From positions 127,124,653-127,188,652 of the forward strand of contig NC_052162.1 in the NCBI RefSeq assembly GCF_902713615.1: 64,000 nt of DNA. Reading direction: 5' to 3'. The translations under genes were made by a program, and so were the position numbers. Origin of the DNA: Scyliorhinus canicula (Eukaryota). Below, piece after piece: positions 2,531-62,852 of this stretch (its first letter is position 1; every line of letters starts with the position of its first letter). The notes under the pieces were generated by a model that did no database searches, was not told the origin of the DNA, and saw nothing but the letters and a program-made list of their open reading frames with translations.

Positions 2531-3415
2531 TTGAAAGATTATAACAGCAAAAGAATTCACAGTCTAGGAGAATGCGAACTAGATGTCAGTGCAAAGAATA
2601 AAATGCATAAAGTGAAGCCTTCCATTGTCGAGACTAAATGTGAATCACTACTGAGAGTGGAAGCCTGTGAAGCACTGGAATTGGTAATAAGAGGATTCAG
2701 TGCTGACTGTGCTGCAATCACTCAAAAATACATCAGTGGATTCAATCCTTCCAGCATTTCCCGAAATATTTCAAGGATTTGGAGTTTTGCCATTCGCGTG
2801 TCGGATCCACCTGGAAGAGAATGAGCAACCAGTCATACATACACCAAGGTGAGTACCAGCCAACAGAAAAGATCGACTAAAAAAAATGACTTGGACAGGA
2901 TGACAAACCTGAGGTGACACAACGAATTGAAGAACCAACGGACTGGGTAAAATAATGACCTGCGAATCTGCATGGATCCCGAAGATCTCAATTTAAATAT
3001 AAAGAGAGAGCATTGTCCAATTGTGAAAAGAGAAGGGATTGTGTGCGAGATGTCCGGAGCGACCTGCTTCAGCAAACTAGATGCTCAGCAGGGTTTTTGG
3101 CAACTTGAGCTGGATGAGGAAAGCAGAAAGCTGTGCACCTTCAACACTGCATTCGGGCATGACTGATTTCTCCGAATGCCATTTGGTATTCTTTCAGCAT
3201 CTGAAACTTTCCGTAGGGCCATAGAACGTGTAGAAGAAATTCCAGGTGTCAAGAGTGTACGTAGACGATATCATTGTTTCGGGTTCAACAAAAGAAGAGC
3301 TCAGCTAAAGGCTTGTCGAAGTGTTGAGAAAAATAAAATTGTAAGTGTGGTCTCAGATTAAACGTGGCCAAATGCCAGTTTGGTGTTGAAGATATGACGT
3401 TCTTGGGCGGCAAAC
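2531..3415 (+). mobile_element. Gypsy/Ty3 LTR retrotransposon pol remnant (post-protease region and RT)
   Basis: RICMDPEDLN...FSKLDAQQGFWQLEL...LCTFNTAFG, RMPFGILSASETF, YVDDII (about 3258), AKCQFG; contains stops and frameshifts. Confidence 0.88.
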
Positions 3416-3530
3416 TTATGGCGGCACGCCAGCACGGTGGTTAGCACTGTTGCTTCACAGCACCACGTTCGATTCCCGGCTTGGGTCACTGTCTGTGCGG
3501 GGGGCCTGCACGTTCTCCCCGTGGGTTTCC

Positions 3531-3620
3531 TCATTCACCCGAGGAAGGAGCTGTGCTCCGAAAGCTAGTGAATTGAAACAAACCTGTTGGACTTTAACCT
3601 GGTGTCGTCAGAACTCTTAG
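3531..3620 (+). mobile_element. Penelope-like element terminal fragment with minimal hammerhead-ribozyme motif
   Basis: ATTCAC-CCGAGGA-A-GGAGC-tgt-GCTCC-GAAA-GC-TA-GTGAAT: helices I and II pair perfectly; core has U4>C. Confidence 0.7.
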
Positions 3621-3904
3621 TTTGCTCGTTATTTGGTTTAACACAGTGGGCGAAGACAGAGAGCTGGCTTGTAATAGAACATAGAACAGCACAGAACAGG
3701 CCCTTCGGCCCTCGATGTTGTGCCGAGCCATGATCACCCTAATGCAGACCAAGACCAGCAGTACGGGTTGAATTCCCGTACCAACCTCCCAAAACAGGCG
3801 CCGGAATGTGGCAACCAGGGGCTTTTCACAGTAATTTAATTGAAGCCCACTTGTGACAATAAGCTATTATTATTATTATTATCATCACTTCAGTTAGATA
3901 CACA

Positions 3905-4128
3905 GGGGCCAGTTTAGCTCAGACGGCTGGACAGTTGGTTCGAGATGCAGAGCGACGCCAACAGCGTGGGTTCAATTCCCGTACTGGCTGAGGTTATTCA
4001 TGAAGGCCCACTTTCTCAACCTTGCCCCTCGCCTGAGGTGTGGTGATGGTCAGATTAAATCACCACCAGGCAGCTCCCCCCGCAAAGGGGAAAGCAGACT
4101 ATGGTCATCTGGGACTATGGCCACTTTG
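3905..4128 (+). mobile_element. tRNA-derived SINE in ZNF intron (paralogous copies about 9823, 22716, 44254, 55763)
   Basis: A-box-like tagctcagacgg and B-box ggttcaattccc followed by a conserved body; repeated in each unit. Confidence 0.7.
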
Positions 4129-4734
4129 CTATAGATACAAATGGAGAAAGATTTTAAGGTCTCTCTATCTGGGACATGAAACAGTGACCATGGATCTGTT
4201 GCTCAAATTAAATCGTACCTTAACAAGAATTGGGAGGGTATATATTGGGTGGAGTGAGTGTTGGATGACTTTTGGGAAGGAGAGGGATCGAATGTTCATA
4301 GAAACTAGAATTGTCTGTTCTGAATGTCTATCCTGTACTAACAGTGATGATTGTGTGAACCCCTTTTACAGCATCTCAGAAGGTGAGGATTTACAGACAG
4401 AAATCTCAAAGCAAACTTCGCATCAACATCCGACAGCGTCGTTCAATTCATCGGGACTGGAATATCATCGGCCTTTAAATCTAGAAAGAGAAATGTTTGT
4501 CTGTTCTGTCTGCTTCAGAATGCTCTAAACATCAGTGTGACTGGAAAAGCACCGAGACACACACACCGGAGTGAGAGTGTTCCAGAGCACTGACTGTGGA
4601 AAGAGCTTTAACCAGTTACACAGCCTGAAAAACATCACACCATTCACAGCGGGGAGAGACCGTACACGTGTTCTGTGTGTGGACGAGGCCTCAACTGGGC
4701 GGTGAACCTGGAGAGACACAAGGGCACCCGCAGC

Positions 4735-5337
4735 ATGGAGAAACCGTGGAAATGTGGGGACTGTGGGAAGGGATTCAGAGCCCCATCCCAATTGGAAGCT
4801 CATCGACGCAGTCACAGTGGGGAGAGGCCGTTCACCTGCTCTCAGTGTGAGAAGGGATTCATTCGGATGTGTAACCTGCAGAGACACCAGCGAGTCCATA
4901 CTGGGGAGAGGCCATTCACCTGCTCTGTGTGTGGGACAGGATTCGCTCGGTTGTGCAACCTGCAGACACACCAGCGAGTCCACACCGGGGAGAGGCCATT
5001 CACCTGCTCCCAGTGTGGGAAGGGATTCAGTGAGTTATCCAACCTGCGGGTACACCTACGAGTCCACAGCGGGGAGAAGCCGTTCACCTGCTCGGACTGT
5101 GGGAAGAAATTCTCTAAGTCATCCAACCTGGTGACACACCAGCGAGTTCACACCAGGGAGAGGCCATTCACCTGCTCTGTGTGTGGTAAGAGATTCAGCG
5201 ATTCATCCACTCGGCTGACACACCAGCGCACTCACAGTAAGGAGAAGCCGTTCACCTGCTCCGAGTGTGGGAAGGGATTCACTCGGTCAACCTACCTGCT
5301 CAAACACCAGCAGGTTCACATCGGGAAGAGGCGGTGA
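4735..5337 (+). CDS. C2H2 zinc-finger protein A, 200 aa, 7 fingers, no effector domain
   Basis: [10 protein letters not shown] start (agcATGG), 7 CxxC-x12-HxxxH units with TGERP linkers; splice acceptor ttttacag ends 4371; its promoter is not in the window. Confidence 0.85.
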
Positions 5338-6117
5338 TACGATCTCTTATTTTATCTTCAATTAAGAGTTACAGGCTTGGTTGACTGGAGGAGTCCAAAA
5401 ATACAACTTTATTTGCGAATCATTCACCTTGATTCTCTTTAATAGAAAAACTAAATCAAAACTTTGATCAAATAATACATCATAACATAATAAAGAGAAT
5501 CAATACATGGTTCAGAATTTCTGCAAGCGTAAGTTGAGAATAAAGTTTGAATCATGAAGCCTTATTCTTAATGAAATTCTGATCAATGGTCTAATCCCTC
5601 ATTTACTCCCATTGGTTTCTAATTCTCAGCTGAAGCTTCCTGATTTATTCAAATATCTGTCTATCACTTAGAAAATGATTTGTTATCCAAGCATTCGTCA
5701 ATTCTTAAGATTTACTGATCTCCATCAAATTAATTAAATGTCTACGTGCTCCCGCCCCTTGTACCAATCCTACAAATATAAGGTGCTTGCATTAACCTTG
5801 CTGTTGCTGAGGCTTTGATACATTTTTATTACTAAATGTTGCTGTTGCTAAGGCTATGATACATTTTCATTACAGATTGTCTTGAGTAACAATGGTTTAT
5901 TAATTACATGGGGCTTTTATGCAATTTTTCATGAAACAATGTTAGATTCCTGCTTAGCAGTCCTTATTTATTATCTGAAACAATGACTATCTTTCCATAT
6001 TAGCCTTGTGGATATTAGATTCACTGTCTGTGCTCTGAATTAAGAAATGTACTGCATCAATTCTTAAAGGCATCAATAAAGCAATATATCAGTGAATCAA
6101 TCAATCAGTAAATATCT
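5335..6117 (-). mobile_element. LTR-like element A (about 780 bp) inserted in the last ZNF linker; supplies the stop codon
   Basis: Ends TGATA...TATCT; flanks GGCGG/GGCCG (GGCTG/GGCCG in other copies) as 5-bp TSD; ZNF sequence resumes after it. Orientation inferred from a reverse AATAAA near the left end. Confidence 0.7.
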
Positions 6118-6199
6118 GGCCGTTTATCTGCTGTGTGTGTGGGAAGCGTTTTCCCTGTTATCCACCCTGCGCAGCTACCAGCGAGTTCACAAGTGATGA
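6118..6199 (+). pseudogene. Orphaned terminal zinc finger (copies start at 12188, 26732, 37277, 46778, 58156)
   Basis: PFICCVCGKRF..LSTLRSYQRVHK** followed by about 120 bp homologous to the 3' end of the - strand ZNF genes (LRYQRAHK*). Confidence 0.8.
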
Positions 6200-7062
6200 C
6201 AGTGTTTGGGCTCTGCTGTTATTGCTGCTGTTAATCACACCCAGGACTGAACCATGTTCATTCTGACACTTGGTGAAGTGGGAGGGTCAGAGGGTTTCTC
6301 TCTGCTGGACTCAGTGAGGGGGGTGAGGAGATTTAGGAGAACCAGGGATGAGGGACTTCAGTTATTTGGAGAGACTGGAGGAAATTGTTCTCTTCAGACC
6401 ATAAGATCCATTCGGGAAGGAGGCCATTCAACCCATTGATACCATGCTGGCTCTCTGTGGAGAAAACTGGTCAGTCCCGTTTCCCTAAAATGTCCATCCA
6501 AATTTCATTTTGAAATAGTTCAGGGTGTCTGCTTCCACCATCCTCACGGGCAGCGAGTTCCACACTCACTGTGCACCTCCCTCCGCACCCGCATCTTTAT
6601 ACTTTCATTCTTTCATGGGATGTGGTGTTTCTGGCCAGGCCCAGCATTTGTTGTCCGTCCCTAATTGCTGCTTTAGAAGGTGTTGGGGGAGGCACCTTCT
6701 TGAACTGCTGAAGTCTGTGTGGTGTCGGTAACACCCCGGCAACAGACCGGTGACACCCACAATGCTGTCAGGGTGGGAGTTCCAGAATAGAAATTCAGAA
6801 CAGACAATTCTAGTTTCTGTGGAATATTCTTTCCTCTCATTCCCCAAGATCTGCAAGTCTCCATCCCAAACACTCTCCCTCCATTCTCACCCTGCTCTAA
6901 TATTCACCCTCCCAATTCTCCTGAAGGTGCTGATTCAGGCTGACTGACAGATCCCTGCTCACTGCTTCCTGTCCTGAACACAGAGACCTGAAAATCTTCC
7001 TGCAGGCTGCCAGACAGATGTATGTCTACATTACTGGACAGAGAATGTGTGTAATATACAGA

Positions 7063-7664
7063 CTGGATTCACTTCCTTTCCCTTCAGTTGCAGCAAGTCC
7101 CCAATGTCCCCCCAGAATGAGGAAAGAAATGGAAAGGGGGAAACATTGATTTCCTCCCAGATGTTGCAGAGGAGGAAGTTTTAGTCCAACCTCCGCATTG
7201 TGATGTCACAAGGGAGCCCTGCCAAGATCAGCCAATAGGAATTACTGATCCGTGGTGACGTCACCGGGCTCCATTGCGCAGAACCCGGGAGCCCCGGCCC
7301 CACCCATTGGTCCCCGCCCACCTCCTCCAGACAAGGTTTCCAGGGCTCCGGCCAGAGCGAGAAGCCGCTCAGTGACCTCCCCCTTCTCCTGGACTGCGCA
7401 TGTGCGGCTGAGAGCTCGCCCTCTGACCTTCCGGCTGAGGTGTTGACCAATGCGAAGATTGGAGGACCGGAAGTACTCTCTTGGTTCAGATCAAACCGCG
7501 GACTTCCGGTGTCTGAAATTGTCGATTCACACAGACTGAAACCTCCTCCTGTCTCCAACATCTGTGAGTAAAACACTTTCTTTTCTCCCCCTTTCCATTT
7601 CTTTTCTCATTCTCACCTTCAATTGGTCACTTGCAGCGACTGAAGGGAAAGGAAGTGAATCCAG
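7063..7664. promoter_or_regulatory. Bidirectional promoter cassette P1 with inverted arms; + exon-1 donor at 7564
   Basis: Arms 7063-7180 and 7539-7664 are diverged reverse complements; core has TGACGTCA, two CCAAT, TGCGCATG, CCGGAAG/CTTCCGG; donor ct|gtgagt. Confidence 0.8.
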
Positions 7665-7871
7665 GGAGGGTGCAGACTCTGCAAAGCTTGGCCCAGGTCT
7701 CTCTCTCTCTCTTAAAGACATTGACATCCTTTGCTCCCTCAGCTTGACACATTTATTTGTCTGGCTAAAAGGATGGTCTCTTTCCCAATGTTCACAATTA
7801 AGGGGCTGCTTTCCCCAGGAGATGGCTGACATTTAAGGGGATAGGAAAATAATATTTAAAAATTCATACAT

Positions 7872-8095
7872 GGGGGCAGCACGGTGGCGCAGTGTCTTAG
7901 CACTGCTGCCTCACGGCGCTGAGGTCCCAGGTTCGATCCCAGCTCTGGGTCACTGTCCGTGTGGAGTTTGCACATTCTCCCTGTGTTTGCGTGGGTTTCG
8001 CCGCCACAAGCCATAGATGTGGAAGTTAGGTAGATTGGCCATGGTAAATTGCACCTTAATTGGAAAAACTTAATTGTGTGCACCAAATTTATAAA
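7872..8095 (+). mobile_element. HE1/V-SINE-like SINE
   Basis: gggcagcacggtggcgcagtg...ggttcgatccc...gggtcactgtccgtgtggagtttgcacattctcc. Confidence 0.8.
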
Positions 8096-8234
8096 AAGAA
8101 AGGGGAAAAAAATAATTCAAAGGATGCAGTTGTTGCTCGTTTAGTCAGTGTTTATTTCGTATTCCTCCAATTCAGAGGGCATTTAAGAGTCAATCACTGT
8201 ATGGGTCGAGTTGAGAAACACCAAGGGGGCGAAA

Positions 8235-9220
8235 TACATTTGTCTGGGTGGTACACAGACCCTCAAACTGTATTGGTAACGTTGGGAATAGCATTAGACA
8301 GGAAATCAGAGATGGATGTGATAAAGGAACATCTGTGATTATGGGTGACTTTAAGCTGCAGATAGATTGGGTGAGTCAAATTAGTCACTCTAAAGAGAAA
8401 GAATTTCTGGAGTGTACTCGGGATGGTTTTCTGGACCAATATGGTGAGGAACCAACAAGGAAACAGCCCAACTTGGACTGGGTGTTGTGCAATGAGAAAG
8501 GCTTTGTTGGCAATCTTGTTATGAGAGAACCTTTGGGGATGTGTTGGGAGGGGAGATCAGTTGGGGAGCATGGGGTGAGGCACTGCAAAGGGTAAACGGG
8601 ACCTCCTCTTGTGCAAGGATGAGCCTGATACAGCTCTAGGTGGTGGGTGCAAATGACTTGGGCGAGAATGAGTGGGTTTTTTCAGGAGGTAGCAGATGGG
8701 TGTGGGCGGGGGCCAGCGAATCACGCGCACATGTTTTGCGGTTGTGTATAATTGGGAAGATTCTGGGCGCGAGTGTTTGCGGCCTTAGCCGGGATAGTGG
8801 AGGAGGAGGTGGACCCGGACCCTTTGGTGGCGATATTTGGGGTTTCAGAGAAGCCGGAGCTCATGGAGAGGAGGAAGGCCAATGTTGTGGCCTTCGCCTC
8901 CCTGATTTATGGTGGTGGATTTTACTGGAGTGGCGGTTGGCATTGCCACTGGGGGTAGCGGCTTAGTTGGGTGACCTGTACGACTTCCTGCGGTTGGAGA
9001 AGATAACGTATGAGTTAAGGGGCTCTGCAGAGGGGTTTGAGAAAAGCTGGGGGATGTTTGTGACTGTGTTTGAGGGGCTGTTCGTCGCAGGGTGGGTGTG
9101 GGTGGAAAAGGGAAACAATTTGTACAAACTGTCAAGTTGATAGCTGGGAAGTATGTTTCCCGGGCTGTTTATTTGCTGTCACCTGTTTTAATACATGTTT
9201 GTAATAAAATACATTTTAAA
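8235..9220 (+). mobile_element. CR1 endonuclease fragment fused (about 8540) to L1/Tx1 3' fragment
   Basis: VIMGDF...LDQYGEEPTRKQPNLDWVLCNE, then PLVAIFGVSEKP...VAFASLI and an A-rich tail. Confidence 0.7.
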
Positions 9221-9229
9221 AAAACATTT

Positions 9230-9650
9230 CTATGTATTGCTGTGGATCTGGGGTCACATGTAGGCCGGACCAGGTAAGGACGGCAGATTTCCTTCCCTAA
9301 ATGACATGAACGAACCAGTTGGGTTTTTACGACAATCGGCAATGGTTCCATGGTCATCATCAGACTTTTAATTCCAGATTTTTACTGAATTCAAATTGCA
9401 CCATCTGCTGTGGTGGGATTTGAACCCTGCTCCCCAGAGCATTTACAAAGCATCTGCTGTGACAAAGAGTCATCCAGACTGGAAACGTTAGCTCCCTTCT
9501 CTCCTCACAGATATTGTCAGACCTGCTGCGATTGTCCAGTATTTTCTGTTTTTGTTTCAGATTCCAGCATCTGCAGTAATTTGCTGTTCTCCCCAGAACA
9601 TTATCCTGGATCTCTGGATTACTGATCCTGTGATAATACCACTGCACCAT
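9230..9650 (-). mobile_element. tRNA-headed SINE (SacSINE/DeuSINE-like) interrupted by a Penelope fragment; copies about 22065-22486 and 55195-55534
   Basis: Reverse complement has A/B-box-like head (tggtgcagtgg; gggttcaaatccc). Confidence 0.55.
9444..9588 (+). mobile_element. Penelope-like 3' terminal fragment with degenerate hammerhead; 14-bp TSD
   Basis: TSD ctccccagagcatt/ctccccagaacatt; gct-GTGACAA-a-gagtc-atcca-gactg-GAAA-cgtt-agc. Confidence 0.65.
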
Positions 9651-10544
9651 GCACTGTGCCGAAGGCCCGGAATCGATCCCGTCCCCGGGTCACTGTCTGT
9701 GTGGAGTTTGCACTTTGCCTCCCCTTCAGTCATTTAGATTATCTGTCAGTTCCAGATTTCTCACATCCTCCTTCCACATAGGGTTCAGTATATTGCTCAT
9801 TATCAGTTCAGTTATATATACAGGGGCCGGTTTAGCTCAGATGGCTGGACAGTTGGTTCGAGATGCAGAGCGACGCCAACAGCGTGGGTTCAATTCCCGT
9901 ACTGGCTGAGGTTATTAATGAAGGCCCACTTTCTCAACCTTGCCCCTCGCCTGAGGTGTGGTGATGGTCAGATTAAATCATCACCAGGCAGCTCTCCCCG
10001 CAAAGGGGAAAGCAGACCATGGTTATCTGGGACCATGGCCACTTTGCTATAGATACAAATGGAGAAAGATTTTAAGGTCTGTCTGTCTGGGACATGAAAC
10101 AGTGACCATGGATCTATTGCTCAAATTAAATCGTACCTTAACAAGAATTGTGAGGGTATATATTGGGTGGAGTGAGTATTGGATGACTTTTGGGAAGGAG
10201 AAGGGATCGAATATTCATAGGAACTAGAATTGTCTGTTCTGAATGTCTATCCTGTACTGACTGTGATGATTGTGTAAACCCCTTTTACAGGATTTCAGAA
10301 GGTGAGGATTTACAGACAGAAATCTCAAAGCAAACTTCACGTCAACATCCGACAGCGTCGCTCAATTCATCGGGACTGGAATATCATCGGCCTTTAAATC
10401 GAGAAGGAGAAATGTTTGTTCTGTCTGTTTCAGAATGCTTTAAACATCAGTGTGACTGGAAAAGCACCGAGACACACACACCCGTGTGAGAGTGTTCCAG
10501 AGCACTGACTGGAGAACCTGGAGAGACACAAGGACACCCGCACC

Positions 10545-11351
10545 ATGGAGAAACCGTGGAAATGTGGGGACTGTGGGAAGGGATTCAGTGCCCCATCACG
10601 ACTGGAAGCTCATCGACGCAGTCACACTGGGGAGAGGCCGTTCACCTGCTCTCGGTGTGGGAAGGGATTCACTCACTTATTCACCCTGCAGAAACACCAG
10701 CGAGTTCACACTGGGGAGAAGCCGTTCACCTGCTCTCAGTGTGAGAAGGGTTTCACTCAGTTATCCAGCCTGCGGTCGCACCAGCAAGTTCACACTGGGG
10801 AGAGGCCGTTCACCTGCTCAGTGTGTGGGACAGGATTCACTCGGTTGTGTAACTTGCAGTCACACCAGCGAGTCCACACTGGGGAGAGGCCATTCACCTG
10901 CTCAGTGTGTGGGACAGGATTCACTCGGTTGTCCAACCTGCGGGTACACCAGCGAGTCCACACCGGGGAGAGGCCGTTCACCTGCTCCCAGTGCGGGAAG
11001 GGATTCAGTGAGTTATCCAACCTGCGGGTCCACGAGCGAGTTCACACTGGGGAGAGGCCATTCACCTGCTCGGACTGTGGGAGGAGATTCTCCAAATCAT
11101 CCAACATGGTGTCACACCAACGACTTCACACCAGGGAGAGGCCGTTCACCTGCTCTGAGTGTGGGAAGGGATTCAGCGATTCATCCTCCCGGCTGTCACA
11201 CCAGCGAATTCACAGTAAGGAGAGCCATTCACCATCTCCAAGTATGGGCTGGGATTCACTCGATCAACCTACCTGCTCAAACACCAGCGAATTTACACTG
11301 GGGAGAGGCCATTCACCTGCTCCGAGTTGGGGAAGGGATTCTCTCGGTTAA
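10545..11351 (+). CDS. C2H2 zinc-finger protein B, 8 intact fingers, frameshifted tail
   Basis: accATGG MEKPWKC; 1-nt deletion (gagagccattc) after finger 8; acceptor ends 10290. Confidence 0.75.
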
Positions 11352-15190: not shown

Positions 15191-15294
15191 AATCTGGAAG
15201 GCCATGAGGAACCGGGGGTGTTCCTAATGTTTAAATCCCTCAGGTGGAAGGGAGTGAAGCTCGCGCTTGGACTGAAGAGTCAACAATTTATCTG

Positions 15295-15570
15295 AATGGT
15301 ACCATTTGTTTCAGCCAGGGTCACTACTTAAAGCTCTTTCCTCAGTCAGTGCACTGGAACACTCCCACTTGATTGTCTGTTTGTCTTGATGCTGTTTCTT
15401 CACATTGATGCTTAATATCATTGGAAACAGACAGAATAGCCAAACATTTATCCTTCTAGATTCAAAGGCCAATGATATGTAGGTTCTTAGAATCTGACAT
15501 TCACTTTTTGATATGACGTTTGGTGTGAAATTTCTGTCTGTAAATCCTCTCGTTCCGATAGCCGATAAAA
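15295..15570 (-). pseudogene. Truncated 5' part of - strand partner ZNF exon (copies about 50820-51090, 61980-62250)
   Basis: Reverse complement aligns to the + exon leader (ggcctttgaatctagaagga; agtgttccagtgcactgactg); acceptor ttttacag mutated to ttttatcg. Confidence 0.75.
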
Positions 15571-15882
15571 GGAGTTTACATAAATCATCACTGTCAGTAC
15601 ATAATAGAAATTCAGAACAGACAATTTAGTTTCTATGAAACATTCCTTCCTCTCATTCCCCAAAAGCTCTAAATCTCCACCCCACACACTCTCCCTCCAT
15701 TCTCACTCTGCTGTATCTAATATTCACCCTCCCAATTCTCCTGAAGGTGCTGATTCAGGCTGACTGACAGATCCCTGCTCACTGCTTCCTGTCCTGGACA
15801 CAGAGACCTGAAAATCTTCCTGCAGGCTGCCAGACGGATGTATGTCTACAATACTGGACAGAAAATGTGTGTAATATATAGA

Positions 15883-16507
15883 CTGGATTCACTTCCTTTC
15901 CCTTCAGTTGCTGCAAGTCCCCAATGCCCCCCCCCCAGAATGAGGAAAGAAATGGAAAGGGGGAAACATTGATTTCCTCCCAGATGTTGCAGAGGAGGAA
16001 TTTTTCGTCTTACTTCCGCATTGTGACGTCACAAGAAAACCCTGCCGGGATCAGCTAATAGGAATCACTCTGCCCGTGGTGACGTCAGCGGGCTCCAGTG
16101 CGCATGCCCGGCGCGGACACGGGAGCCCCGCCCCCACCCATTGTTCCCCACCCACCTCCTCCAGACAGGGTTTCCAGGCCACCGGCAGACGGCTCGGGCC
16201 AGAGCGAGAAGCCGCTCAGCGACCTCCCCCTTCCCCGGGACTGCGCATGTGGGGCTGAAAGCCCGACCTCTGACCTTCGGCTGAGTTGTTGACCAATGGG
16301 AAGATTGGGGAACCGGAATGACTCAGGTCCTCCAGCCAATCAGAGCGCGCGCTTTGTGGGACGACAGAGCTTCACACCGACTGAACCCTCCTCCTCTCCA
16401 ACATCTGTGAGTAAAACACTTTCTTTTCTCCCCCTTTCCATTTCTTTTCTCATTCTCACCTTCAATTGGTCACTTGCAGCAACTGAAGGGAAAGGAAGTG
16501 AATCCAG
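15883..16507. promoter_or_regulatory. Bidirectional promoter cassette P2; donor at 16407
   Basis: Same arms; TGTGACGTCACA, TGCGCATG, CCAAT motifs; right part of the core is divergent. Confidence 0.78.
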
Positions 16508-16819
16508 GGAGGGTGCAGACTCTGGAAAGGTTGGCCCAGGTCTCTCTCTCTCTCTCTCTTAAAGACATTGACATCCTTTGCTCCCCCAGCTTGTCACATT
16601 TATTTGTCTGGCTAAAAGGATGGCCTCTTTCCCAATGTTCACAATTAACGGGCTGCTTTCCCCAGGAGATGGCTGACATTTAAGGGGACAGGAAAATAAT
16701 TTTAAAAATTCATTCATGGGATGCAGTTGTTGATCGTTTGGTCAGTTTTATTGCCTATTCCTCCAATTCAGAAGTCATTTCAGAGACAACCGCTGTATGG
16801 GTCGAGTTAAATTCATTCG

Positions 16820-23556: not shown

Positions 23557-24579
23557 ATGGAGAAACCGTGGAAATGTGGGGACTGTGGGAAGGGATTCAG
23601 AGTACCATCACGACTGGAAGCTCATCGACGCATTCACACTGGGGAGAGGCCCTTCACCTGCTCCCGGTGTGGGAAGGGATTCGCTCAATTATCCAACCTG
23701 TGGATACACGAGCGCGTTCACACTGGGGAGCGACCATTCACCTGCTCTCAGTGTGGGAATGGATTTGCTCTGTTATCCAGCCTGCGGACACACCAGCGAG
23801 TTCACACTGGGGAGAGGCCGTTCACCTGCTCTAAGTGTGAGAAGGGATTCGCTCACTTATCCAGCCTGCGGACACACCAGCGAGTTCACACTGGGGAGAA
23901 GCCATTCACCTGCTCTCAGTGTGGGAAGGGATTCGCTCACTTATCCAGTCTGCGGAAACACCAGCGCGTTCACACTGGGGAGAAGCCATTCACCTGCTCT
24001 CACTGTGAGAAGGGATTCGCTCACTTATCCAGCCTGCAGACACACCAGCGAGTTCACACTGGGGAGAAGCCATTCACCTGCTCTCAGTGTGGGAAGGGAT
24101 TCACTCGGTTATACAGCCTGAAGAAACATCAGCGAATTCACACTGGGGAGAGACCGTTCACCTGCTCTCAGTGTGAGAAGGGATTCATTCGGTTATCCAA
24201 CCTGCTGACACACCAGCGAGTTCACACTGAGGCGAAGCCATTCACCTGCTCTCAGTGTGAGAAGGGATTCATTCGGTTATCCAACCTGCAGACACACCAG
24301 CGAGTTCACAATGGGGAGAAACCGTTCACCTGCTCTCAGTGTGAGAAGGGATTCGCTCACTTATCCAACCTGCGGACACACCAGCGAGTTCACACTGGGG
24401 AGAAGCCGTTCATCTGCTCTTTGTGTGGGAAGAGATTCACTCAGTCATCTCATCTGCAGGCACACCAGCGAGTTCACACTGGGGAGAGTCCGTTCACCTG
24501 CTCCGAGTGTGGGAAAGGATTCACTCGGTCAATCTTCCTGCTCAAACACCAGCAGGTTCACATCGGGAAGAGGCTGTGA
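23557..24579 (+). CDS. C2H2 zinc-finger protein C, 340 aa, 12 fingers
   Basis: accATGG MEKPWKC; intact frame to GKRL*; acceptor ends 23190. Confidence 0.88.
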   Translation: MEKPWKCGDCGKGFRVPSRLEAHRRIHTGERPFTCSRCGKGFAQLSNLWIHERVHTGERPFTCSQCGNGFALLSSLRTHQRVHTGERPFTCSKCEKGFAHLSSLRTHQRVHTGEKPFTCSQCGKGFAHLSSLRKHQRVHTGEKPFTCSHCEKGFAHLSSLQTHQRVHTGEKPFTCSQCGKGFTRLYSLKKHQRIHTGERPFTCSQCEKGFIRLSNLLTHQRVHTEAKPFTCSQCEKGFIRLSNLQTHQRVHNGEKPFTCSQCEKGFAHLSNLRTHQRVHTGEKPFICSLCGKRFTQSSHLQAHQRVHTGESPFTCSECGKGFTRSIFLLKHQQVHIGKRL

Positions 24580-32368: not shown

Positions 32369-32688
32369 CTGTAAAAGGAGTTTACAAACGTCATCGGTGT
32401 CAGAACAGAATAGAAATTCAGAACAGACAATTCTAGTTTCTGTGGAATATTCTTTCCTCTCATTTCCCCAAGATCTGCAATTCTCCATCCCACACACTCT
32501 CTCCATTCTCACCCTCCTGTATCTAATATTCACCCTCCCAATTCTCCTGAAGGTGCTGATTCAGGCTGATTGACAGATCCCTGCTCACTGCTTCCTGTCC
32601 TGGACACAGAGACCTGAAAATCTTCCTGCAGGCTGCCAGACAAATGTCTGTCTGCATTACTGGACAGAAAATGTGTGTAATATACAGA

Positions 32689-33312
32689 CTGGATTCACTT
32701 CCTTTCCCTTCAGTTGCTGCAAGTCCCCAATGTCCCCCCAGAATGAGGAAAGAAATGGAAAGGGGGAAACATTGATTTCCTCCCAGATGTTGCAGAGGAG
32801 GAAGTTTGAGTCCAACTTCTGCCTTGTGACGTCACAGGGGAACCCTACCTGGATCAGCCAATAGGAATCACTCTGCTTCGTGGTGACGTCTCCGGGTTCC
32901 AGTGCGCAGGTCGGCGTGGACACGGGAGCCCCGCCCCAGCCTTTGTTCCCCGCCCACCTCCTCCAGACAGGGTTTCCAGGCAACCGGCTGACGGCTCCAG
33001 CGTGAGCGAGAAGCCGCAAAGTGACCGCCCCCTTGCCCGGGACTGCGCATGTGCAGCTGAGAGCCCGCCCCCTAACCTTCCGGCTGAGCTGTTGACCAAT
33101 GGGAAGATTGAAGGACCGGAAGGACTCTTTCGTTCACATCAAACAGCGGATTTCCGGTGTCTGAAAATGGCGCTTCACACAGACTGAAACCTCCTCCTGT
33201 CTCCAACATCTGTGAGTAAAACACTTTCTTTTCTCCCCCTTTCCATTTCTTTTCTCATTCTCACCTTCAATTGGTCACTTGCAGCAACTGAAGGGAAAGG
33301 AAGTGAACCCAG
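32689..33312. promoter_or_regulatory. Bidirectional promoter cassette P3; donor at 33212
   Basis: TGTGACGTCACA, two CCAAT, GC box, TGCGCATGTGCA, CCGGAAG, AAAATGGCG. Confidence 0.82.
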
Positions 33313-33990
33313 GGAGGGTGCTGACTCTGGAAAGCTTGGCCAAGGTGTCTCTCTTATAGCACAATTGCTTTACAGCTCCAGGTTCCCAGTTCGAATCCGG
33401 CCCCGGGTCACTGTCCGTGTGGAGTCTGCAAGTTCTCCCAGTGTCTGCGTTCCCCCCCCCCCCCCCCCCCCCCCCCGTCCCCCCCCCCCCCGCAAAGGGG
33501 AAGTCAGATAATGGTTATCTGGGACTATGGCAACTTTGCTATGGATAAAAATGGAGAATGGAGAAACATTTTAGGGTCCCTCTGTCTGGGACATGAAACA
33601 GTGACCATGGATCTTTTGCTCAAATTAAATCTTATCTTAACAAGAATTGGGAGGGTATATATTGGGTGGAGTGAGTATAGGATGACTTTTGGGAAGGAGA
33701 GAGGATTGAATGTTCATAGAAAGTAGGATTGTCTGTTCTGAATGTCTATCCTGTACTGACAGTGATGATTGTGTGAACTCCTTTTACAGGATCTCAGAAG
33801 GTGAGGATTTACAGACAGAAATCTCAAAGCAAACTTCACGTCAACATCCGACAGCGTCGCTCATTTCATCAGGACTGGAGTATCATCGGCCTTTAAATTG
33901 TTTGTCTGTTCAGTCTGCTTCTGAATGCTTTAAATATCAGTGTGACTCGAAAAGCACCGAGACACACACATCCGAGTGAGAGTGTTCTAG

Positions 33991-34083
<93 letters not shown>

Positions 34084-34128
34084 TAAGGACGAGGCCTCAA
34101 CTGGGCGATGAACAAGGACACCCGCACC

Positions 34129-35238
34129 ATGGAGAAACCGTGGAAATGTGGGGACTGTGGGAAGGGATTCAGTGCCCCATCACGACTGGAAGCCCATCGA
34201 CGCAGTCACACTGGGGAGAGGCCGTTCACCTGCTCCCGTTGTGAGAAAGGATTCACTCACTTATCCAGCCTGCGGACACACCAGCGAGTTCACACTGGGG
34301 AGAGGCCGTTCACCTGCTCCCAGTGTGAGAAGAGATTCGCTCACTTATCCAGCCTGCGGAAACACCAGCTAGTTCACACTGGGGAGAGGCCCTTCACCTG
34401 CTCTCAGTGTGAGAAGGGATTCACTCACTTATCCAACCTGTGGACACACCAGCGCGTTCACACTGGGGAGAGGCCATTCACCTGCTCTCAGTGTGAGAAG
34501 GGATTTGCTCACTTATCCAGTCTGCGGAAACACCAGCTAGTTCACACTGGGGAGAGGCCGTTCACCTGCTCTCAGTGTGAGATGGGATTCATTCGGTTAT
34601 CCAACCTGCGGGCGCACCAGCGGGTTCACACTGGAGAGAGGCCGTTCACCTGCTCTCAGTGTGAAATGGCATTCGCTCACTTATCCAACCTGCGGACACA
34701 CCAGCGCGTTCACACTGGGGAGAAGCCATTCACTTGCTCTCAGTGTGAGAAGGGATTCGCTCTGTTATCCAGCCTGCGGACACACCAGCGAATTCACACT
34801 GGGGAGAGGCCATTCATCTGCTCTGTGTGTGGGAAGGGATTCACTCAGTCATCTCACCTGCAGGCACACCAGCGAGTTCACACTGGGGAGAGGCCGTTCA
34901 CCTGCTCTCAGTGTGGGAAGGGATTCACTCGGGCATCTTTCCTGCAGGAAACACCAGCGAGTTCACACTGGGGAGGAGGCCGTATCATCTGCTCTGTGTG
35001 TGGGAAGGGATTCACTCGGTCATCTCACCTGCAGATACACCAGCGAGTTCACACTGGGGAGAGGCCATTCATCTGCTCTGAGTGTGGGAAGGGATTCAGC
35101 GATTCATCCTCCCGGCTGTCACACCAGCGAATTCACAGTAAGGAGAGACCATTCACCTGCTCCGAGTGTGGGAAGGGATTCACTCGGTCAACCTTCCTGC
35201 TCAAACACCAGCAGGTTCACATTGGGAAGAGGCTGTGA
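34129..35238 (+). CDS. C2H2 zinc-finger protein D, 13 finger units (12 intact); alternative in-frame ATG at 34108
   Basis: accATGG MEKPWKC; finger 10 scrambled by three +1 insertions; acceptor ends 33789. Confidence 0.82.
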   Translation: MEKPWKCGDCGKGFSAPSRLEAHRRSHTGERPFTCSRCEKGFTHLSSLRTHQRVHTGERPFTCSQCEKRFAHLSSLRKHQLVHTGERPFTCSQCEKGFTHLSNLWTHQRVHTGERPFTCSQCEKGFAHLSSLRKHQLVHTGERPFTCSQCEMGFIRLSNLRAHQRVHTGERPFTCSQCEMAFAHLSNLRTHQRVHTGEKPFTCSQCEKGFALLSSLRTHQRIHTGERPFICSVCGKGFTQSSHLQAHQRVHTGERPFTCSQCGKGFTRASFLQETPASSHWGGGRIICSVCGKGFTRSSHLQIHQRVHTGERPFICSECGKGFSDSSSRLSHQRIHSKERPFTCSECGKGFTRSTFLLKHQQVHIGKRL

Positions 35239-42432: not shown

Positions 42433-43506
42433 GGTGTTAGTGTCCTTGCGTTTCTCCAGGTCCAATGATCATTTCCAGCCTCGTCCACACAGAGAACACT
42501 TTTACAGTCTCTCGCCACTGAATGGTGCGATATTTTCTCTTCCGATGTAACCGTTTAAAGCTCGGTCCACAGTCAGTTCACTGGAAAACTCTCACTCAGA
42601 TCTTTGTGTGTCTTGGTGCATTTCCAATCACACATTGAAGCAGACAGAACAGCCAAACATTTGTCCTTCTAGATTCAAAGGCCGATGATATTCAGGTCAC
42701 AATGAATTGAATGAGGATGTCAGATCCTGACCGTACATCCACATCTGATATCCTGTTGTCATGTGCGAGCACCATTAAGAAATAGGTGTTTAAGAAATGC
42801 ACCTTTAAGAAATGTGTGTTTATCTGTGATGTAGAGTGTGGGTGGAGCTTTGCTTTCTGTCAGCTTTTTACTTTCGTTTTAGGCTGTTTGCTCCAGGGTG
42901 TGTTTTAGTTTTGTTTTCAGAGCTGGATAGCTGCAGTCACAGCCAGAAGGGGTATTAGTCTCTCTCTCTCTGTCATCTAAAAACTGTAAATTGATCCTTT
43001 GGTGATTTAAAACTTGAGTTCATAGAATAAACATTGTTTTGTTGTTAAAAATGCTTTTCCATTTCTGCTGTACCACACCTGTAGAGTGGGCTGTGTGCTC
43101 CCCATACCACAATCTATTACAAGTTGTGGGTCGGTTAACTCCATGATACACTTTGGGGTTCTCTCTAAACACTGGCCCATAACACTGTCAAGGGAGTTTA
43201 CAAAAGTCATTGGTGTCAGAACAGGATAGAAATTCAGAACAGACAATTCTAGTTTCTATGGAATATTCTTTCCTCTCATTTCCCCAAGATCTGTAATTCT
43301 CCAACCCACACACTTTCTTTCCATTCTCATCCTCCTCTTTCTAATATTCACCCTCCCAATTCTCCTGAAGGTGCTGATTCAGGCTGATTGACAGATCCCT
43401 GCTCACTGCTTCCTGTCCTGGACACAGAGACCTGAAAATCTTCCTGCAGGCTGCCAGACAAATGTCTGTCTATATTACTGGGCAGAAAAGGTGTGTAATA
43501 TACAGA

Positions 43507-43974
43507 CTGGAATAACTTTCTTTCCCTTCAGTTGCTGCAAGCCCCCAATGTCCCCCCAGATGTTGCAGAGGAGGAAGTTTTCATCCAACTTCCGGATTGT
43601 GACGTCACAAGGGAGTATTGCCGGGATCAGCCAATAGGAATCACTGCTCCGTGGTGACGTCTCCGGGTTCCAGTGCGCAGGTTCGGCGCGGACACGTGAA
43701 CGCCTCCCGCACCCATTGTTCCAGAGGTCGCCCCCTGACCTTCCGGCTGAGGTATTGACCAATGGGAAGGTTAGAGGACCGGAAGGACTGTCTCCGTTCA
43801 GATCAAACCGCGGACTTCCGGTGTCTGCAAATGGCGCTTCACACAGACTGAAACCTCCTCCTGTCTCCAGCATCTGTGAGTAAAACACTTTCTTTTCTCC
43901 CCCTTCCATTTCTTTTCTCATTCTCACCTTGAATTGGGGACTTGCAGCAGCTGAAGAGAAAGGAAGTGAATCCA
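43507..43974. promoter_or_regulatory. Bidirectional promoter cassette P4 (internal deletions); donor at 43876
   Basis: Keeps CRE, CCAAT, ETS and AAATGGCG; lacks about 100 bp including the NRF1-like site. Confidence 0.75.
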
Positions 43975-45037
43975 GGGAGGGTGCAGACTCTGCAAAGCTT
44001 GGCTCAGGTCTCTCTCGCTCTTATAGCACAATTGCTTCACAGCTTCAGGGTCCCAGGTTCGATTCCCGGCCCCGGGTCACTGTCCGTGTGGATATTGCAC
44101 ATTCTCCCCGTGTGTGCGTGGGTCCCACCCGCCTTTTGAAATACTTTGCCTCCCCTTCCGTCATTTAGATTGTCTGTCAGTTCCAGATTTCTCACATCCT
44201 CCTCCCACATAGGGTTCAATATATTGCTCATTATCAGTTCAGTTATATACACAGGGGACAGTTTAGCTCAGATGGCTGGACAGTTGGTTCGAGATGCAGA
44301 GCAATGCCAACAGCGTGGGTTCAATTCCTGGACTCGCTGAGGTTATTCATGAAGGCCCACTTTCTCAACCTTGCCCCTCGCCTGAGGTGTGGTGATGGTC
44401 AGATTAAATCACCACCAGGCAGCTCCCCCCGCAAAGGGGAAAGCAGACTATGGCCATCTGGGACTATGGCCACTTTGCTACAGATACAAATGGAGAAAGG
44501 TTTTAAGGTCTCTCTATCTGGGACATGAAACAGTGACCATGGATCTGTTGCTCAAATTAAACCGTACCTGAACAAGAATTGGGAGGGTATATATTGCGTG
44601 GAGTGAGCGTTGGATGACTTTTGGGAAGGAGAGAGGATCGAATGTTCATAGAAACTAGAATTGTCTGTTCTGAATGTCTATCCTGTACTGACAGTGATGA
44701 TCCTTTTACAGGATCTCAGAACGTGAGGATTTACAGATAGAAATCTCAAAGCAAACTTCACGTCAACATCCGACAGCGTCGCTCAATTCATCAAGACTGG
44801 AATATCATCGGCCTTTAAATCTGTCTGCTTCAAACATTGTACTGGAAAAGCACCGAGACACACACGCCCGAGTGGGAGAGTTCCAGAGCACTGACTGTGA
44901 AAAGAGCTTTAACCAGTTACACAGCCTGAAAAAAACATCACACCATTCACAGCGGGGAGAGACTGTACACGTGTTCTGTGTGTGGACGAGGCATCAACTG
45001 GGCGGTGAACCTGGAGAGACAAAAGGACACCCGCACT

Positions 45038-50716: not shown

Positions 50717-51398
50717 AACCTAGAGGGCCATGAGGAATCAGGGGTGTTCCTAATATTTAAATCCCTCAGGAGGAAGGGAGTGAAGCTCACGCTTGGACTG
50801 AGGAATCAACAATTTATCTGAATGGTATCATTTTTTTCAGTCAGGGTATCGACTTAAAACTCTTTCCTCAGTCAGTGCACTGGAACACTACCACTCGATT
50901 GTCTGTCTCGATGCTGTTCCTTCACATTGATGCTTAATATCATTGGAAACAGACAGAATAGCCAAACATTTATCCTTCTAGATTCAAAGGCCAATGGTAT
51001 GTCGGTTCTCAGAATCTGATATTGAATTTTTGATATGTTTGGTGTGAGATTTCTGTCTGTACGCTCCTTCTGATAGACGATAAAAGGAGTTTACTATAAA
51101 TCATCACTGTCAGTACATAATAGAAATTTAGAACAGACAATTTAGTTTCTATAGAACATTTCTTCCTATTATTCCCTAAAAGCTGTAAATGTCCATCCCA
51201 CACACTCTCCCTCCATTCTCACCCTCCTGTATCTAATATTCACCCTCCCAATTCTCCTGAAGGTGCTGATTCAGGCTGATTGACAGATCCATGCTCACTG
51301 CTTCCTGTCCTGAACACAGAGACCTGAAAATCTTCCTGCAGGCTGCCAGACAGATGTATGTCTACATTACTGGACAGAGAATGTGTGTAATATACAGA

Positions 51399-52022
51399 CT
51401 GGATTCACTTCCTTTCCCTTCAGTTGCTGCAAGTCCCCAATGTCCCCCCAGAATGAGGAAAGAAATGGAAAGGGGGAGACATTGATTTCCTCCCAGATGT
51501 TGCAGAGGAGGAAGTTTTAGTCAAACTTCCGGATTGTGACGTCACAGGGGAGCCTTGCCAGGATCAGCCAATAGGAATCACTGTGCTCCGTGGTGACGTC
51601 TCCGGGTTCCATTGCGCAGGCTCAGCGCGGACACAGGAGCCACGCCCCCACACATTGTTCCCCGCCCACCTCCTCCAGACAAGGTTTCCAGGCAACCGGC
51701 TGACGGCTCCGGCCAGAGCGAGAAGCCGCTCAGTGACCTTCCCCTTCCCCGGGACTGCGCATGTGCTGGTGTGTGCCCGCCCCTGACCTTCCGGCTGAGG
51801 TATTGACCAATGGGAACGTTGGAGGACCGGAAGGACTCTTCGTTCAGATCAAAATTCGGACTTCCGGTGTCTGAAAATGGCGCTTCACACAGACTGAAAC
51901 CTCCTCCTGTCTCCTACATCTGTGAGTAAAACACTTTCTTTTCTCCCCCTTTCCATTTCTTTTCTCATTCTCACCTTCAATTGGTCACTTGCAGCAACTG
52001 AAGGGAAAGGAAGTGAATCCAG
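51399..52022. promoter_or_regulatory. Bidirectional promoter cassette P5; donor at 51922
   Basis: Full motif set and inverted arms. Confidence 0.82.
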
Positions 52023-52257
52023 GGAGGGTGCAGACTCTGCAAAGCTTGGCCCAGGTCTCTCTCTCTCTTAAAGACATTGACATCCTTTGCTCCCTCAGCT
52101 TGACACATTTATTTGTCTGGCTAAAAGGAAGGTCTCTTTCCTAATGTTCACAATTAAAGAGCTGCTTTCCCCAGGAAATGGATGACATTTAAGGGCACAG
52201 GAAAATAATTTTTAAAGATTCATTCATGGGATGCAGTTGTCGCTTGTTTGGTCAGCA

Positions 52258-56576: not shown

Positions 56577-57347
56577 CTGGAGAAACCGTGGAAATGTGGG
56601 GACTGTGGGAAGGGATTCATAGCCCCATCACGACTGGAAGCTCATCGACGCATTCACACTGGGGAGAGGCCGTTCACCTGCTCTCAGTGTGAGAAGGGAT
56701 TCGCTCACTTATCCAGCCTGCATAGACACCAGCGAGTTCACACTGGAGAGAGGCCGTTCACTTGCTCTGTGTGTGAGAAGGGATTCGCTCACTTATCCAC
56801 CATGCGGACACACCAGCGAGCTCACACTGGGGAGAAGCCATTCACCTGCTCTCAGTGTGGGAAGGGATTCACTCGGTTATCCAGTCTGCGGAAACATCAG
56901 CGAGTTCACACTGTGGAGAAGCCGTTCACCTGCTCTCAGTGTGAGAAGGAATTCGCTCACTTATCCAGCCTGCGGAGACACCAGCGAGTTCACACTGGAG
57001 AGAGGCCGTTCACTTGCTCTGTGTGTGAGAAGGGATTCGCTCACTTATCCACCATGCGGACACACCAGCGAGCTCACACTGGGGAGAAGCCATTCACCTG
57101 CTCTCAGTGTGGGAAGGGATTCACTCGGTTATCCAGTCTGCGGAAACATCAGCGAGTTCACACTGTGGAGAAGCCGTTCACCTGCTCTCAGTGTGAGAAG
57201 GAATTCACTCACTTATCCAACCTGCGGACACACCAGCGAGTTCACACTGGGGAGAGTCCGTTCACCTGCTCCGAGTGTGGGAAAGGATTCACTCGGTCAA
57301 TCTTCCTGCTCAAACACCAGCAAGTTCACATCGGGAAGAGGCTGTGA
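56577..57347 (+). CDS. C2H2 zinc-finger protein F, 9 fingers; start ATG mutated to CTG
   Basis: accCTGG LEKPWKC; frame intact to GKRL*; acceptor ends 56223. May be a young pseudogene. Confidence 0.6.
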   Translation: MEKPWKCGDCGKGFIAPSRLEAHRRIHTGERPFTCSQCEKGFAHLSSLHRHQRVHTGERPFTCSVCEKGFAHLSTMRTHQRAHTGEKPFTCSQCGKGFTRLSSLRKHQRVHTVEKPFTCSQCEKEFAHLSSLRRHQRVHTGERPFTCSVCEKGFAHLSTMRTHQRAHTGEKPFTCSQCGKGFTRLSSLRKHQRVHTVEKPFTCSQCEKEFTHLSNLRTHQRVHTGESPFTCSECGKGFTRSIFLLKHQQVHIGKRL

Positions 57348-62703: not shown

Positions 62704-62852
62704 AATTCTCCTGAAGGTGCTGATTCAGGCTGATTGACAAATCCCTGCTCACTGCTTCCTGTCCTGGACACAGAGACCTGAAAATCTTCCTGCAGGCTGC
62801 CAGATAGATGTCTGCCTACATGACTTGTCAGAAAATGTGTGTAATATACAGA

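What the first reader, a model, noticed from the sequence alone, without database searches (positions are those of the whole stretch)
4372..4737. Start codon born inside a zinc-finger linker; fossil fingers form the 5' UTR
Seen in all copies: after the acceptor come three decayed fingers, MFVCSVCFRM(L/F)[21 protein letters not shown]...HHTIH (Cys>Ser) and YTCSVC...ERHKDTR (His lost). Next is T-M-EKP at the TGEKP linker position, in strong Kozak context (accATGG). Indels pile up upstream of this Met (about 110-bp deletion in B, small deletions in D, E, F) while the frame downstream is kept. The - genes share the same Met. Inference: the family shed its N-terminus and restarts at a linker-derived ATG, giving finger-only proteins.
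Basis: partly seen in the sequence, partly recalled or inferred. Interest (0 to 1): 0.72.

Follow-up and report, generated by a model that had tools for sequence, protein, structure and literature searches.

The report
Shark zinc-finger genes restarted mid-array
In a cluster of catshark zinc-finger genes the front of the coding exon has decayed into an untranslatable leader, and the only usable start codon now sits in the linker before the first intact finger; this is a tidy example of a start codon moving downstream, but use of that start is not yet shown by RNA or protein data.

Summary
After a strong splice acceptor (4371/4372) come about 125 nt of former N-terminal coding sequence and three dead fingers. 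Then comes an ATG (4735) at the G position of a TGEKP-type linker, in A(-3)/G(+4) context, followed by intact fingers.

Three details are wrong:
- Copy F has CTG, not ATG.
- Copies B, D and E carry frame lesions downstream of the start.
- Both minus-strand copies are broken.

The two stops in fossil finger 1 and the ATG are shared by copies about 20% diverged. Since then the in-frame fingers have diversified without one hit on a zinc-ligand codon (0 of 154 non-synonymous changes). Non-3n indels are about five-fold rarer in the fingers than in the leader.

A conserved promoter island with a predicted non-coding exon 1 precedes copies B to G, but not A. It feeds no ORF into the leader.

Relatives in other sharks still translate this leader. 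What was lost is a short domain-less N-terminus plus two or three fingers, not an effector domain.

The scan had already noted this fingers-only family elsewhere in this genome, but the notes my look-ups returned do not mention the linker start.

Verdict: partly confirmed, partly supported, modest interest.

The parts
4336..4371 (+). 3' splice site of the large terminal exon (copy A): branch-site match TACTAAC, pyrimidine run and TTTTACAG
   Evidence: Sequence read. Conserved in all plus copies and in minus-strand partial copies. Use in RNA was not tested.
4372..4495 (+). Fossil N-terminal coding sequence, now leader. The frame from 4373 reads ISEGEDLQTEISKQTSHQ...SSGLEYHRPLNLERE.
   Evidence: Aligns to residues 6-47 of Cetorhinus P0137 (E 4e-6) and 97-151 of Stegostoma P0096 (E 3e-6). 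Positions where relatives have Met read ATC (4373-4375), CTG (4457-4459) and CTA (4481-4483).
4496..4564 (+). Fossil finger 1 (FVCSVCFRML*TSV*LEKHRDTH), with TAA at 4526-4528 and TGA at 4538-4540
   Evidence: Both stops are shared with the minus copies (about 20% diverged) and with the still older partial copies.
4580..4647 (+). Fossil finger 2 ([10 protein letters not shown]...HHTIH): first Cys is Ser (4586-4588), with a frame slip in the A-run near 4627
   Evidence: Partial minus copies at 15293-15824 and their kin keep TGC at the Cys codon, which shows the ancestral state.
4663..4731 (+). Fossil finger 3 ([23 protein letters not shown]): second His is Arg (4729-4731)
   Evidence: The homologous finger is still coding in relatives. 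It lacks the second His in S. torazame P0031 and Mustelus P0124 and keeps it in Cetorhinus P0058.
4735..4737 (+). Candidate start codon at the G position of a TGEKP-type linker (T/S-M-E-K-P-W), context agcATGg (accATGg in the other copies)
   Evidence: Homologous ATGs lie at 10545, 23557, 34129 and 45038, and on the minus strand at 30967-30965 and 42432-42430. Copy F has CTG at 56577.
4735..5337 (+). ORF of copy A: Met plus seven intact C2H2 fingers (200 codons) and a stop
   Evidence: Sister ORFs: C 23557-24579 (12 fingers) and D 34129-35238 (one damaged unit). B and E are truncated by frameshifts. F lacks the ATG.
32800..33211 (+). Promoter-like island and predicted non-coding exon 1 upstream of copy D (CRE palindrome, CCAAT, GC and ETS-type boxes; donor GTGAGTAAAAC at 33212)
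   Evidence: Alignment of six copies. Donors lie at 7564, 16407, 33212, 43876, 51922 and 63378. No ATG-started ORF crosses into the terminal exon. The island is absent in the 4.3 kb upstream of copy A. The exon is predicted from sequence only.

Best explanation
The stretch is the front of the single large coding exon of an effector-less C2H2 zinc-finger gene. The gene is one of at least six tandem paralogs in a catshark-type genome.

The ancestral gene, still seen in other sharks, translated this exon from its first codons. Its order was a short domain-less N-terminus, then fingers, then the constant finger [12 protein letters not shown], then the variable array.

In this subfamily the old start positions are gone and three fingers have died through stops, ligand losses and frame slips. 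The roughly 360 nt between the acceptor and 4734 now act as an untranslated leader.

Translation most likely begins at the ATG in the linker before the constant finger. The Thr codon ACC before that ATG and the Glu codon GAG after it supply a near-optimal initiation context. The product would be a protein made of fingers only, beginning [10 protein letters not shown].

Shown here: the anatomy, the age of the stops and of the ATG, and continued selection on the fingers.

Inferred: the exon 1 model, that the leader is in the mRNA, and that ribosomes start at this ATG.

Not all copies are alive. F has lost the ATG, B and E are truncated, and A has no promoter island.
For: 1. The two stops and the ATG lie at homologous columns in plus copies (about 5% apart) and minus copies (about 20% from the plus copies), so they predate the cluster's expansion.
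2. Selection on the fingers. I built a minimum spanning tree over the 58 in-frame finger units. On edges with at most 8 differences there are 154 non-synonymous and 75 synonymous changes. None of the 154 hits the four zinc-ligand codons (26 expected by simulation; binomial P 5e-11). Forty-six hit the DNA-contact positions -1, 2, 3 and 6 (P 5e-7). On the youngest edges (at most 5 differences) the ligand count is 0 of 50 (P 4.5e-4).
3. Internal control. The two B fingers that lie behind its 1-nt deletion have lost both cysteines in one unit and one cysteine in the other, and gained a stop.
4. Indels. The leader shows 10 distinct events in 2.18 kb, similar to the proximal intron. The coding arrays show 4-5 non-3n events in 5.0 kb (binomial P about 0.002-0.004).
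5. The linker ATG is the only in-frame ATG after the last upstream stop in A, B, C and E. It has A at -3 and G at +4. The leader holds 0-3 short upstream ORFs that end more than 150 nt before it.
6. The predicted exon 1 in the conserved promoter island brings no open frame into the leader.
7. Database proteins of other sharks begin at this same linker position: Chiloscyllium P0131 ([10 protein letters not shown]) and Mustelus P0123 ([10 protein letters not shown]).
8. Transcriptome-sized assemblies from at least six studies hold 0.37-0.53 of the sampled words of 3900-5400, against 0.19-0.24 of the upstream stretch 3300-4365. This is weak and indirect.
Against: - There is no read-level RNA evidence.
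- Overall substitution rates are equal in the intron, the leader and finger 1. Overall dN/dS on the fingers is about 0.8 and not clearly below 1.
- Three of six plus copies carry frame lesions downstream. F lacks the ATG. Both minus copies are dead.
- Copy A, the one at the given coordinates, has no promoter island within 4.3 kb.
- None of the five Met-started ORFs is in the 15-billion protein collection.
- Most database proteins that start at this Met in other sharks contain frame-shifted finger translation. They may be gene-finder picks on broken genes.
Confidence: 0.55

Rival explanations
1. The whole cluster is a set of decaying pseudogene copies. The linker ATG is incidental. The clean fingers reflect recent duplication and gene conversion from working family members elsewhere, not translation of these copies.
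For: - Equal substitution rates in intron, leader and finger 1.
- Lesions in B, D, E and F and in both minus copies.
- A lacks a promoter island.
- No matching protein in the large collection.
- Met-started models in other sharks look broken.
- An in-frame ATG somewhere in the 41 open codons before finger 1 has roughly even odds by chance (own estimate).
Against: - Zero ligand-codon hits in 154 non-synonymous changes, and 0 of 50 on the youngest edges. Fingers that fell out of frame in B decayed quickly.
- A five-fold deficit of frame-breaking indels relative to the leader.
- Three 1-nt insertions in one D unit that together restore the frame.
- The ATG and its context are kept across 20% divergence.
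- Gene conversion would need donors that also lack a working N-terminus, because the stops are shared.
Confidence: 0.27
2. The fingers are translated from an upstream coding exon or through an alternative acceptor that bypasses the stops, so the linker Met is an internal residue.
For: - Gene models of relatives (S. torazame P0031, Stegostoma P0096, Cetorhinus P0137) have longer N-termini reaching through the homologous leader.
- There are AG dinucleotides inside the leader, for example after 4516 and after 4651 in copy A.
- Regions of 2-6 kb between the island and the exon in B, C and F were not examined for further exons.
Against: - In frame with the fingers, copy A is closed by stops up to 4611.
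- The candidate acceptor at 4651 lies inside the 107 bp deleted in B.
- The acceptor-like CAG right before the ATG exists in A only.
- The predicted exon 1 has one ATG, followed by a stop six codons later, and no open frame across either candidate donor in 4 of 5 copies.
- In the compact copies D and G only about 580 nt separate the donor from the acceptor.
Confidence: 0.08
3. The leader is kept as a regulatory RNA element. Short upstream ORFs such as MFVCSVCFRML would throttle translation, so the leader would not be a neutral fossil.
For: - Upstream ATGs with A at -3 at 4493 and 4520 in A and at homologous sites in B and C.
- A strong-context ATG with a 6-codon ORF in the predicted exon 1 of D, E, F and G.
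- The leader's substitution rate is no higher than the intron's.
Against: - The upstream ATG at 4493 is deleted in D, E and F, and E has no upstream ATG in the exon at all.
- Indel density in the leader equals or exceeds that of the intron.
- B has lost 107 bp of the leader.
Confidence: 0.05

Closest known systems
Shark and ray effector-less C2H2 family whose arrays begin with the constant finger [12 protein letters not shown]
   Same: - Same constant first finger (77-87% identity over the first 40 residues).
- Same degenerate finger before it.
- Homologous leader sequence.
- No Pfam effector domain.
- Head-to-head partners around a promoter island.
   Different: - In those relatives the leader and the finger before the constant finger are still coding, and the linker residue is E, G, R, T or V.
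- Here the leader is closed by stops, two extra dead fingers are present, and the linker residue is Met.
Mammalian KRAB-ZNF clusters with degenerate fingers and finger rows stranded in untranslated regions, such as the eleven fingers in the ZNF252 3' UTR (PMC2865497)
   Same: Tandem clusters of poly-finger genes that gain and lose fingers. Dead fingers remain in the transcript outside the ORF. Many members are pseudogenes.
   Different: In ZNF252 a premature stop strands fingers in the 3' UTR and the start is untouched. Here the stranded fingers are predicted to lie in the 5' leader and the start codon itself would have moved into the array. There is no KRAB domain.
Start-codon loss with use of a downstream in-frame ATG (general, well-known mode of N-terminal truncation; own knowledge)
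   Same: The ancestral start positions are mutated and the next good-context in-frame ATG defines a shorter protein.
   Different: The new start lies in a repeat linker whose own codons supply the initiation context. The same column is a predicted start in two other shark orders.

Membership tests
Krueppel-type C2H2 poly-zinc-finger genes | Tandem C-X2-C-X12-H-X3-H units of 28 residues joined by TGEKP-like linkers | tested here: met
   59 regular fingers in six plus-strand arrays, in 84-nt register.
Krueppel-type C2H2 poly-zinc-finger genes | All fingers in one large terminal exon behind a splice acceptor | tested here: inconclusive
   A strong conserved acceptor and branch site are present. 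Use in RNA could not be tested.
Shark/ray fingers-only family with constant first finger | Array opens with the finger [21 protein letters not shown] | tested here: met
   Present in all six plus copies and both minus copies. It is 77-87% identical to proteins of Scyliorhinus torazame, Heterodontus, Cetorhinus, Chiloscyllium and Mustelus.
Shark/ray fingers-only family with constant first finger | No recognisable effector domain | tested here: met
   No Pfam family matches the translated leader or the N-termini of P0031, P0096 and P0037. P0124 and P0058 have only zinc-finger families above the Pfam gathering cut-offs. Undescribed short motifs cannot be excluded.
Shark/ray fingers-only family with constant first finger | Head-to-head gene pairs around a shared promoter island | tested here: inconclusive
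   The island recurs before B to G, and minus-strand partial copies abut its left side. Two-way promoter use was not tested, and A has no island.
KRAB zinc-finger proteins | KRAB A/B box encoded upstream of the fingers | tested here: not met
   No KRAB hit in the leader or in the relatives' N-termini. The predicted exon 1 is non-coding.
Processed (retro) pseudogene | Intronless copy with poly(A) tail and target-site duplications, dispersed | tested here: not met
   Copies keep about 490 nt of homologous intron, the acceptor and the promoter island. They lie in tandem units of about 11 kb.

The most novel reading that the evidence does not exclude
TGEKP-type linkers are latent start sites. The Thr codon ACC and the Glu codon GAG already frame the middle codon with an optimal initiation context. 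A poly-finger gene whose 5' end is damaged can therefore be rescued by one or two substitutions that create ATG in a linker.

In sharks this would have happened at the linker before the constant finger, possibly more than once: ME-KPW here and in Chiloscyllium, MG-KPW in Mustelus. The result would be a translated subfamily whose N-terminus is the constant finger itself.
Probability: 0.2. Interest if true: 0.5.

Novelty: new variant of a known kind. Interest (0 to 1): 0.3.

Why it matters
If the linker ATG is really used, this shows how fast-evolving zinc-finger genes can survive loss of their 5' coding end. The repeat linker itself would offer a ready-made initiation site, and dead fingers would be recycled as 5' leader.

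It would also fix the true N-terminus of a large shark gene family that is unannotated at this locus. That N-terminus matters for gene models and for asking what the constant first finger does.

If the ATG is not used, the locus is an ordinary decaying zinc-finger cluster.

Tried and rejected
- **Reads.** I called read laying on window 4350-10349 with runs X24, X1, X5 and X15. I sent those places to no search tool afterwards and left them out of the copy-B alignment.
- **Word shares.** Shares from the look-up of sequencing runs are only suggestive. None of the holders is on record as RNA.
- **Exact look-up.** The five Met-started ORFs are not in the collection.
- **DNA of relatives.** The look-up of encoding contigs for Mustelus P0123 and the ENA proteins P0136 and P0139 gave gene ranges but no DNA. 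I could not check for fossil fingers upstream in other species.
- **Pairwise dN/dS.** dN/dS over chained 'orthologous' fingers is unreliable. Internal fingers are 90-100% alike within arrays. I replaced it with spanning-tree edges and site classes.
- **Upstream exons.** tblastn of the relatives' non-finger N-termini showed no further coding exon in the window in the part of the output I could see. That output was cut.
- **Papers.** Two paper searches found nothing on shark zinc-finger start codons.
- **Earlier notes.** Findings look-ups by sequence and by some word sets returned nothing.
- **Transposon copies.** I rejected this because whole units of about 11 kb, including the partners, are collinear.

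Full report
**What is there**

The window carries a cluster of C2H2 zinc-finger genes.
- Six plus-strand copies have their candidate starts at A 4735, B 10545, C 23557, D 34129, E 45038 and F 56577.
- A seventh copy, G, is cut by the window end.
- Two minus-strand copies have candidate starts at 30967 and 42432.
- Three older minus-strand partial copies lie near 15293-15824, 50819-51340 and 61983-62347.
- Earlier notes of this scan call the genome a catshark.

In copy A the order is as follows:
- A branch-site match (TACTAAC) and TTTTACAG end at 4371.
- About 125 nt of non-finger sequence follow.
- Fossil finger 1 (4496-4564) has TAA at 4526 and TGA at 4538.
- Fossil finger 2 (4580-4647) has Ser at its first Cys and a frame slip in an A-run.
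- Fossil finger 3 (4663-4731) has Arg at its second His.
- ATG 4735 reads S-M-E-K-P-W in context agcATGg. The other copies read T-M-E-K-P-W in accATGg or actATGg.

- Copy F has CTG instead of ATG, and its next in-frame ATG lies inside finger 3.
- Copy E has deleted most of fossil finger 1.
- The frame downstream is not clean everywhere.
  - B has a 1-nt deletion near 11225. The two fingers behind it have lost cysteines and gained a stop.
  - D has one unit of 87 nt with three 1-nt insertions that together restore the frame.
  - E has an out-of-frame deletion near 45886.
- Both minus copies keep the ATG but are broken soon after it.

**Age of the arrangement**

- The two stops of fossil finger 1 and the linker ATG sit at homologous columns in the plus copies and in the minus copies.
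- Plus copies differ from each other by about 5% in this region. Minus copies differ from plus copies by 19-20%.
- The stops are also present in partial copies 38% away.
- The leader was therefore closed, and the ATG present, well before the present arrays diversified.

**Are the fingers behind the ATG under selection?**

Raw rates say nothing.
- Mean pairwise differences are about 0.05 in the proximal intron, 0.06 in the leader and 0.06 in finger 1.
- Chained pairwise dN/dS is unsafe, because internal fingers are up to 100% alike within one array.

I therefore took all 58 finger units that are in frame up to the first lesion, without filtering on finger integrity, and built a minimum spanning tree.
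- On edges of at most 8 differences there are 154 non-synonymous and 75 synonymous changes. Overall dN/dS is near 0.8.
- None of the 154 falls on the four ligand codons. Simulation expects 26, and the binomial P is 5e-11.
- Forty-six fall on the DNA-contact positions -1, 2, 3 and 6 (P 5e-7).
- On edges of at most 5 differences, as young as the flanks, the ligand count is still 0 of 50 (P 4.5e-4).
- B's out-of-frame fingers show what happens without selection.

Frame-breaking indels point the same way.
- They number 4-5 in 5.0 kb of array, against 10 events in 2.18 kb of leader.
- The proximal intron has a density similar to the leader's.

This is the usual signature of working, diversifying finger arrays, and it postdates the upstream stops.

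**Where could translation start?**

- In frame with the fingers, the linker ATG is the first ATG after the last stop in A, B, C and E.
- D has one more in-frame ATG seven codons upstream, at 34108, made by a 12-bp deletion.
- The leader holds 0-3 upstream ATGs, with ORFs of 2-25 codons that end more than 150 nt before the linker ATG.

A block of about 1.1 kb recurs upstream of B to G.
- It carries a TGACGTCA palindrome, CCAAT, GC and ACTTCCGG boxes.
- It ends in a conserved donor, GTGAGTAAAAC, at 7564, 16407, 33212, 43876, 51922 and 63378.
- I joined this predicted exon 1 to the acceptor, using either of two possible donors. No ATG-started frame enters the terminal exon in 4 of 5 copies.
- The one good-context ATG in exon 1 stops after six codons.
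- This exon is a sequence-based prediction only.

Copy A has no such island in the 4.3 kb available upstream.

**What was lost**

- The leader, translated from 4373, aligns to the N-terminus of Cetorhinus P0137 (45% identity, E 4e-6). That protein's fourth residue, a Met, falls on the ATC at 4373.
- The leader also aligns to Stegostoma P0096 (E 3e-6).
- Mustelus P0124 starts MEYHQILKMEGK where the window reads L(CTG)EYHRPLNL(CTA)ERE.
- These relatives carry no Pfam domain ahead of the fingers.
- The finger just before the constant finger already lacks its second His in S. torazame and Mustelus proteins, where it is still coding.
- The subfamily therefore lost a short, domain-less N-terminus and two or three N-terminal fingers, not an effector domain.

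**The linker column in relatives**

- At the column of the Met, relatives have E, G, R, T or V. V (GTG) occurs in the sister catshark protein P0132.
- Proteins that begin at this very column exist: Chiloscyllium P0131 ([10 protein letters not shown]), Mustelus P0123 and P0056 (MGKPWKC) and an ENA protein, P0139.
- P0131, P0056 and P0139 contain frame-shifted finger translation. They may be gene-finder choices on broken genes.

**Expression**

I worked beside that place afterwards.
- Transcriptome-sized assemblies from several studies hold about twice the share of words from the exon-bearing stretch as from the upstream stretch.
- Their nature as RNA is only a guess.
- None of the ORFs is in the large protein collection.

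**Verdict**

- The anatomy is real and old, and the fingers behind the ATG were kept by selection after the front died. That makes a restart at the linker ATG the most likely mechanism (about 0.55).
- A decaying pseudogene cluster is the main rival (about 0.27).
- Degenerate fingers and fingers stranded in a 3' UTR are known in mammalian clusters (PMC2865497).
- Fingers stranded in a 5' leader, with the start moved into a linker, turned up in neither of my two paper searches. It is a small variation on known zinc-finger gene turnover.

Noticed in passing
window 6783-7874, 15600-16720, 32406-33354, 43222-44021, 51116-52230, 62704-63520: A conserved promoter-like island lies before each plus copy except A. 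It has a CRE palindrome, CCAAT, GC and ETS-type boxes and a conserved donor GTGAGTAAAAC. Its left 220 nt are an inverted copy of the proximal intron of the plus genes, which fits head-to-head partners.
   Followed up: partly
window 56757-56924 and 57009-57176: In copy F, fingers 3-4 and 6-7 are 100% identical and fingers 2 and 5 are 96% alike. This points to a very recent 252-bp internal duplication of three fingers.
   Followed up: partly
window 11225-11351: Behind a 1-nt deletion in copy B, the last two finger units have lost cysteines and carry a TAG. B also has one extra 84-nt unit here. This serves as an internal example of decay once a finger is out of frame.
   Followed up: yes
window 34897-34983: One finger unit of copy D is 87 nt long, with three separate 1-nt insertions that together restore the frame. 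The helix and His part of that finger is read out of frame.
   Followed up: partly
window 34108-34110: Copy D has an extra in-frame ATG seven codons before the linker ATG ([12 protein letters not shown]). It was created next to a 12-bp deletion in fossil finger 3.
   Followed up: no
window 3881-4076: A tRNA-derived SINE-like insert lies in the intron of copies A, B, C, E and F but not D or G. It marks two sub-lineages of the duplicated unit. Upstream of it, copy A loses all homology with the other copies.
   Followed up: partly
window 5335-5345 and homologous sites: The shared stop codon (TGA) sits where similarity to the finger-linker consensus breaks off (…AAGAGGC|TGTGATAC…). I did not test it.
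   Followed up: no
I did not examine it further and sent it to no search tool.
   Followed up: no
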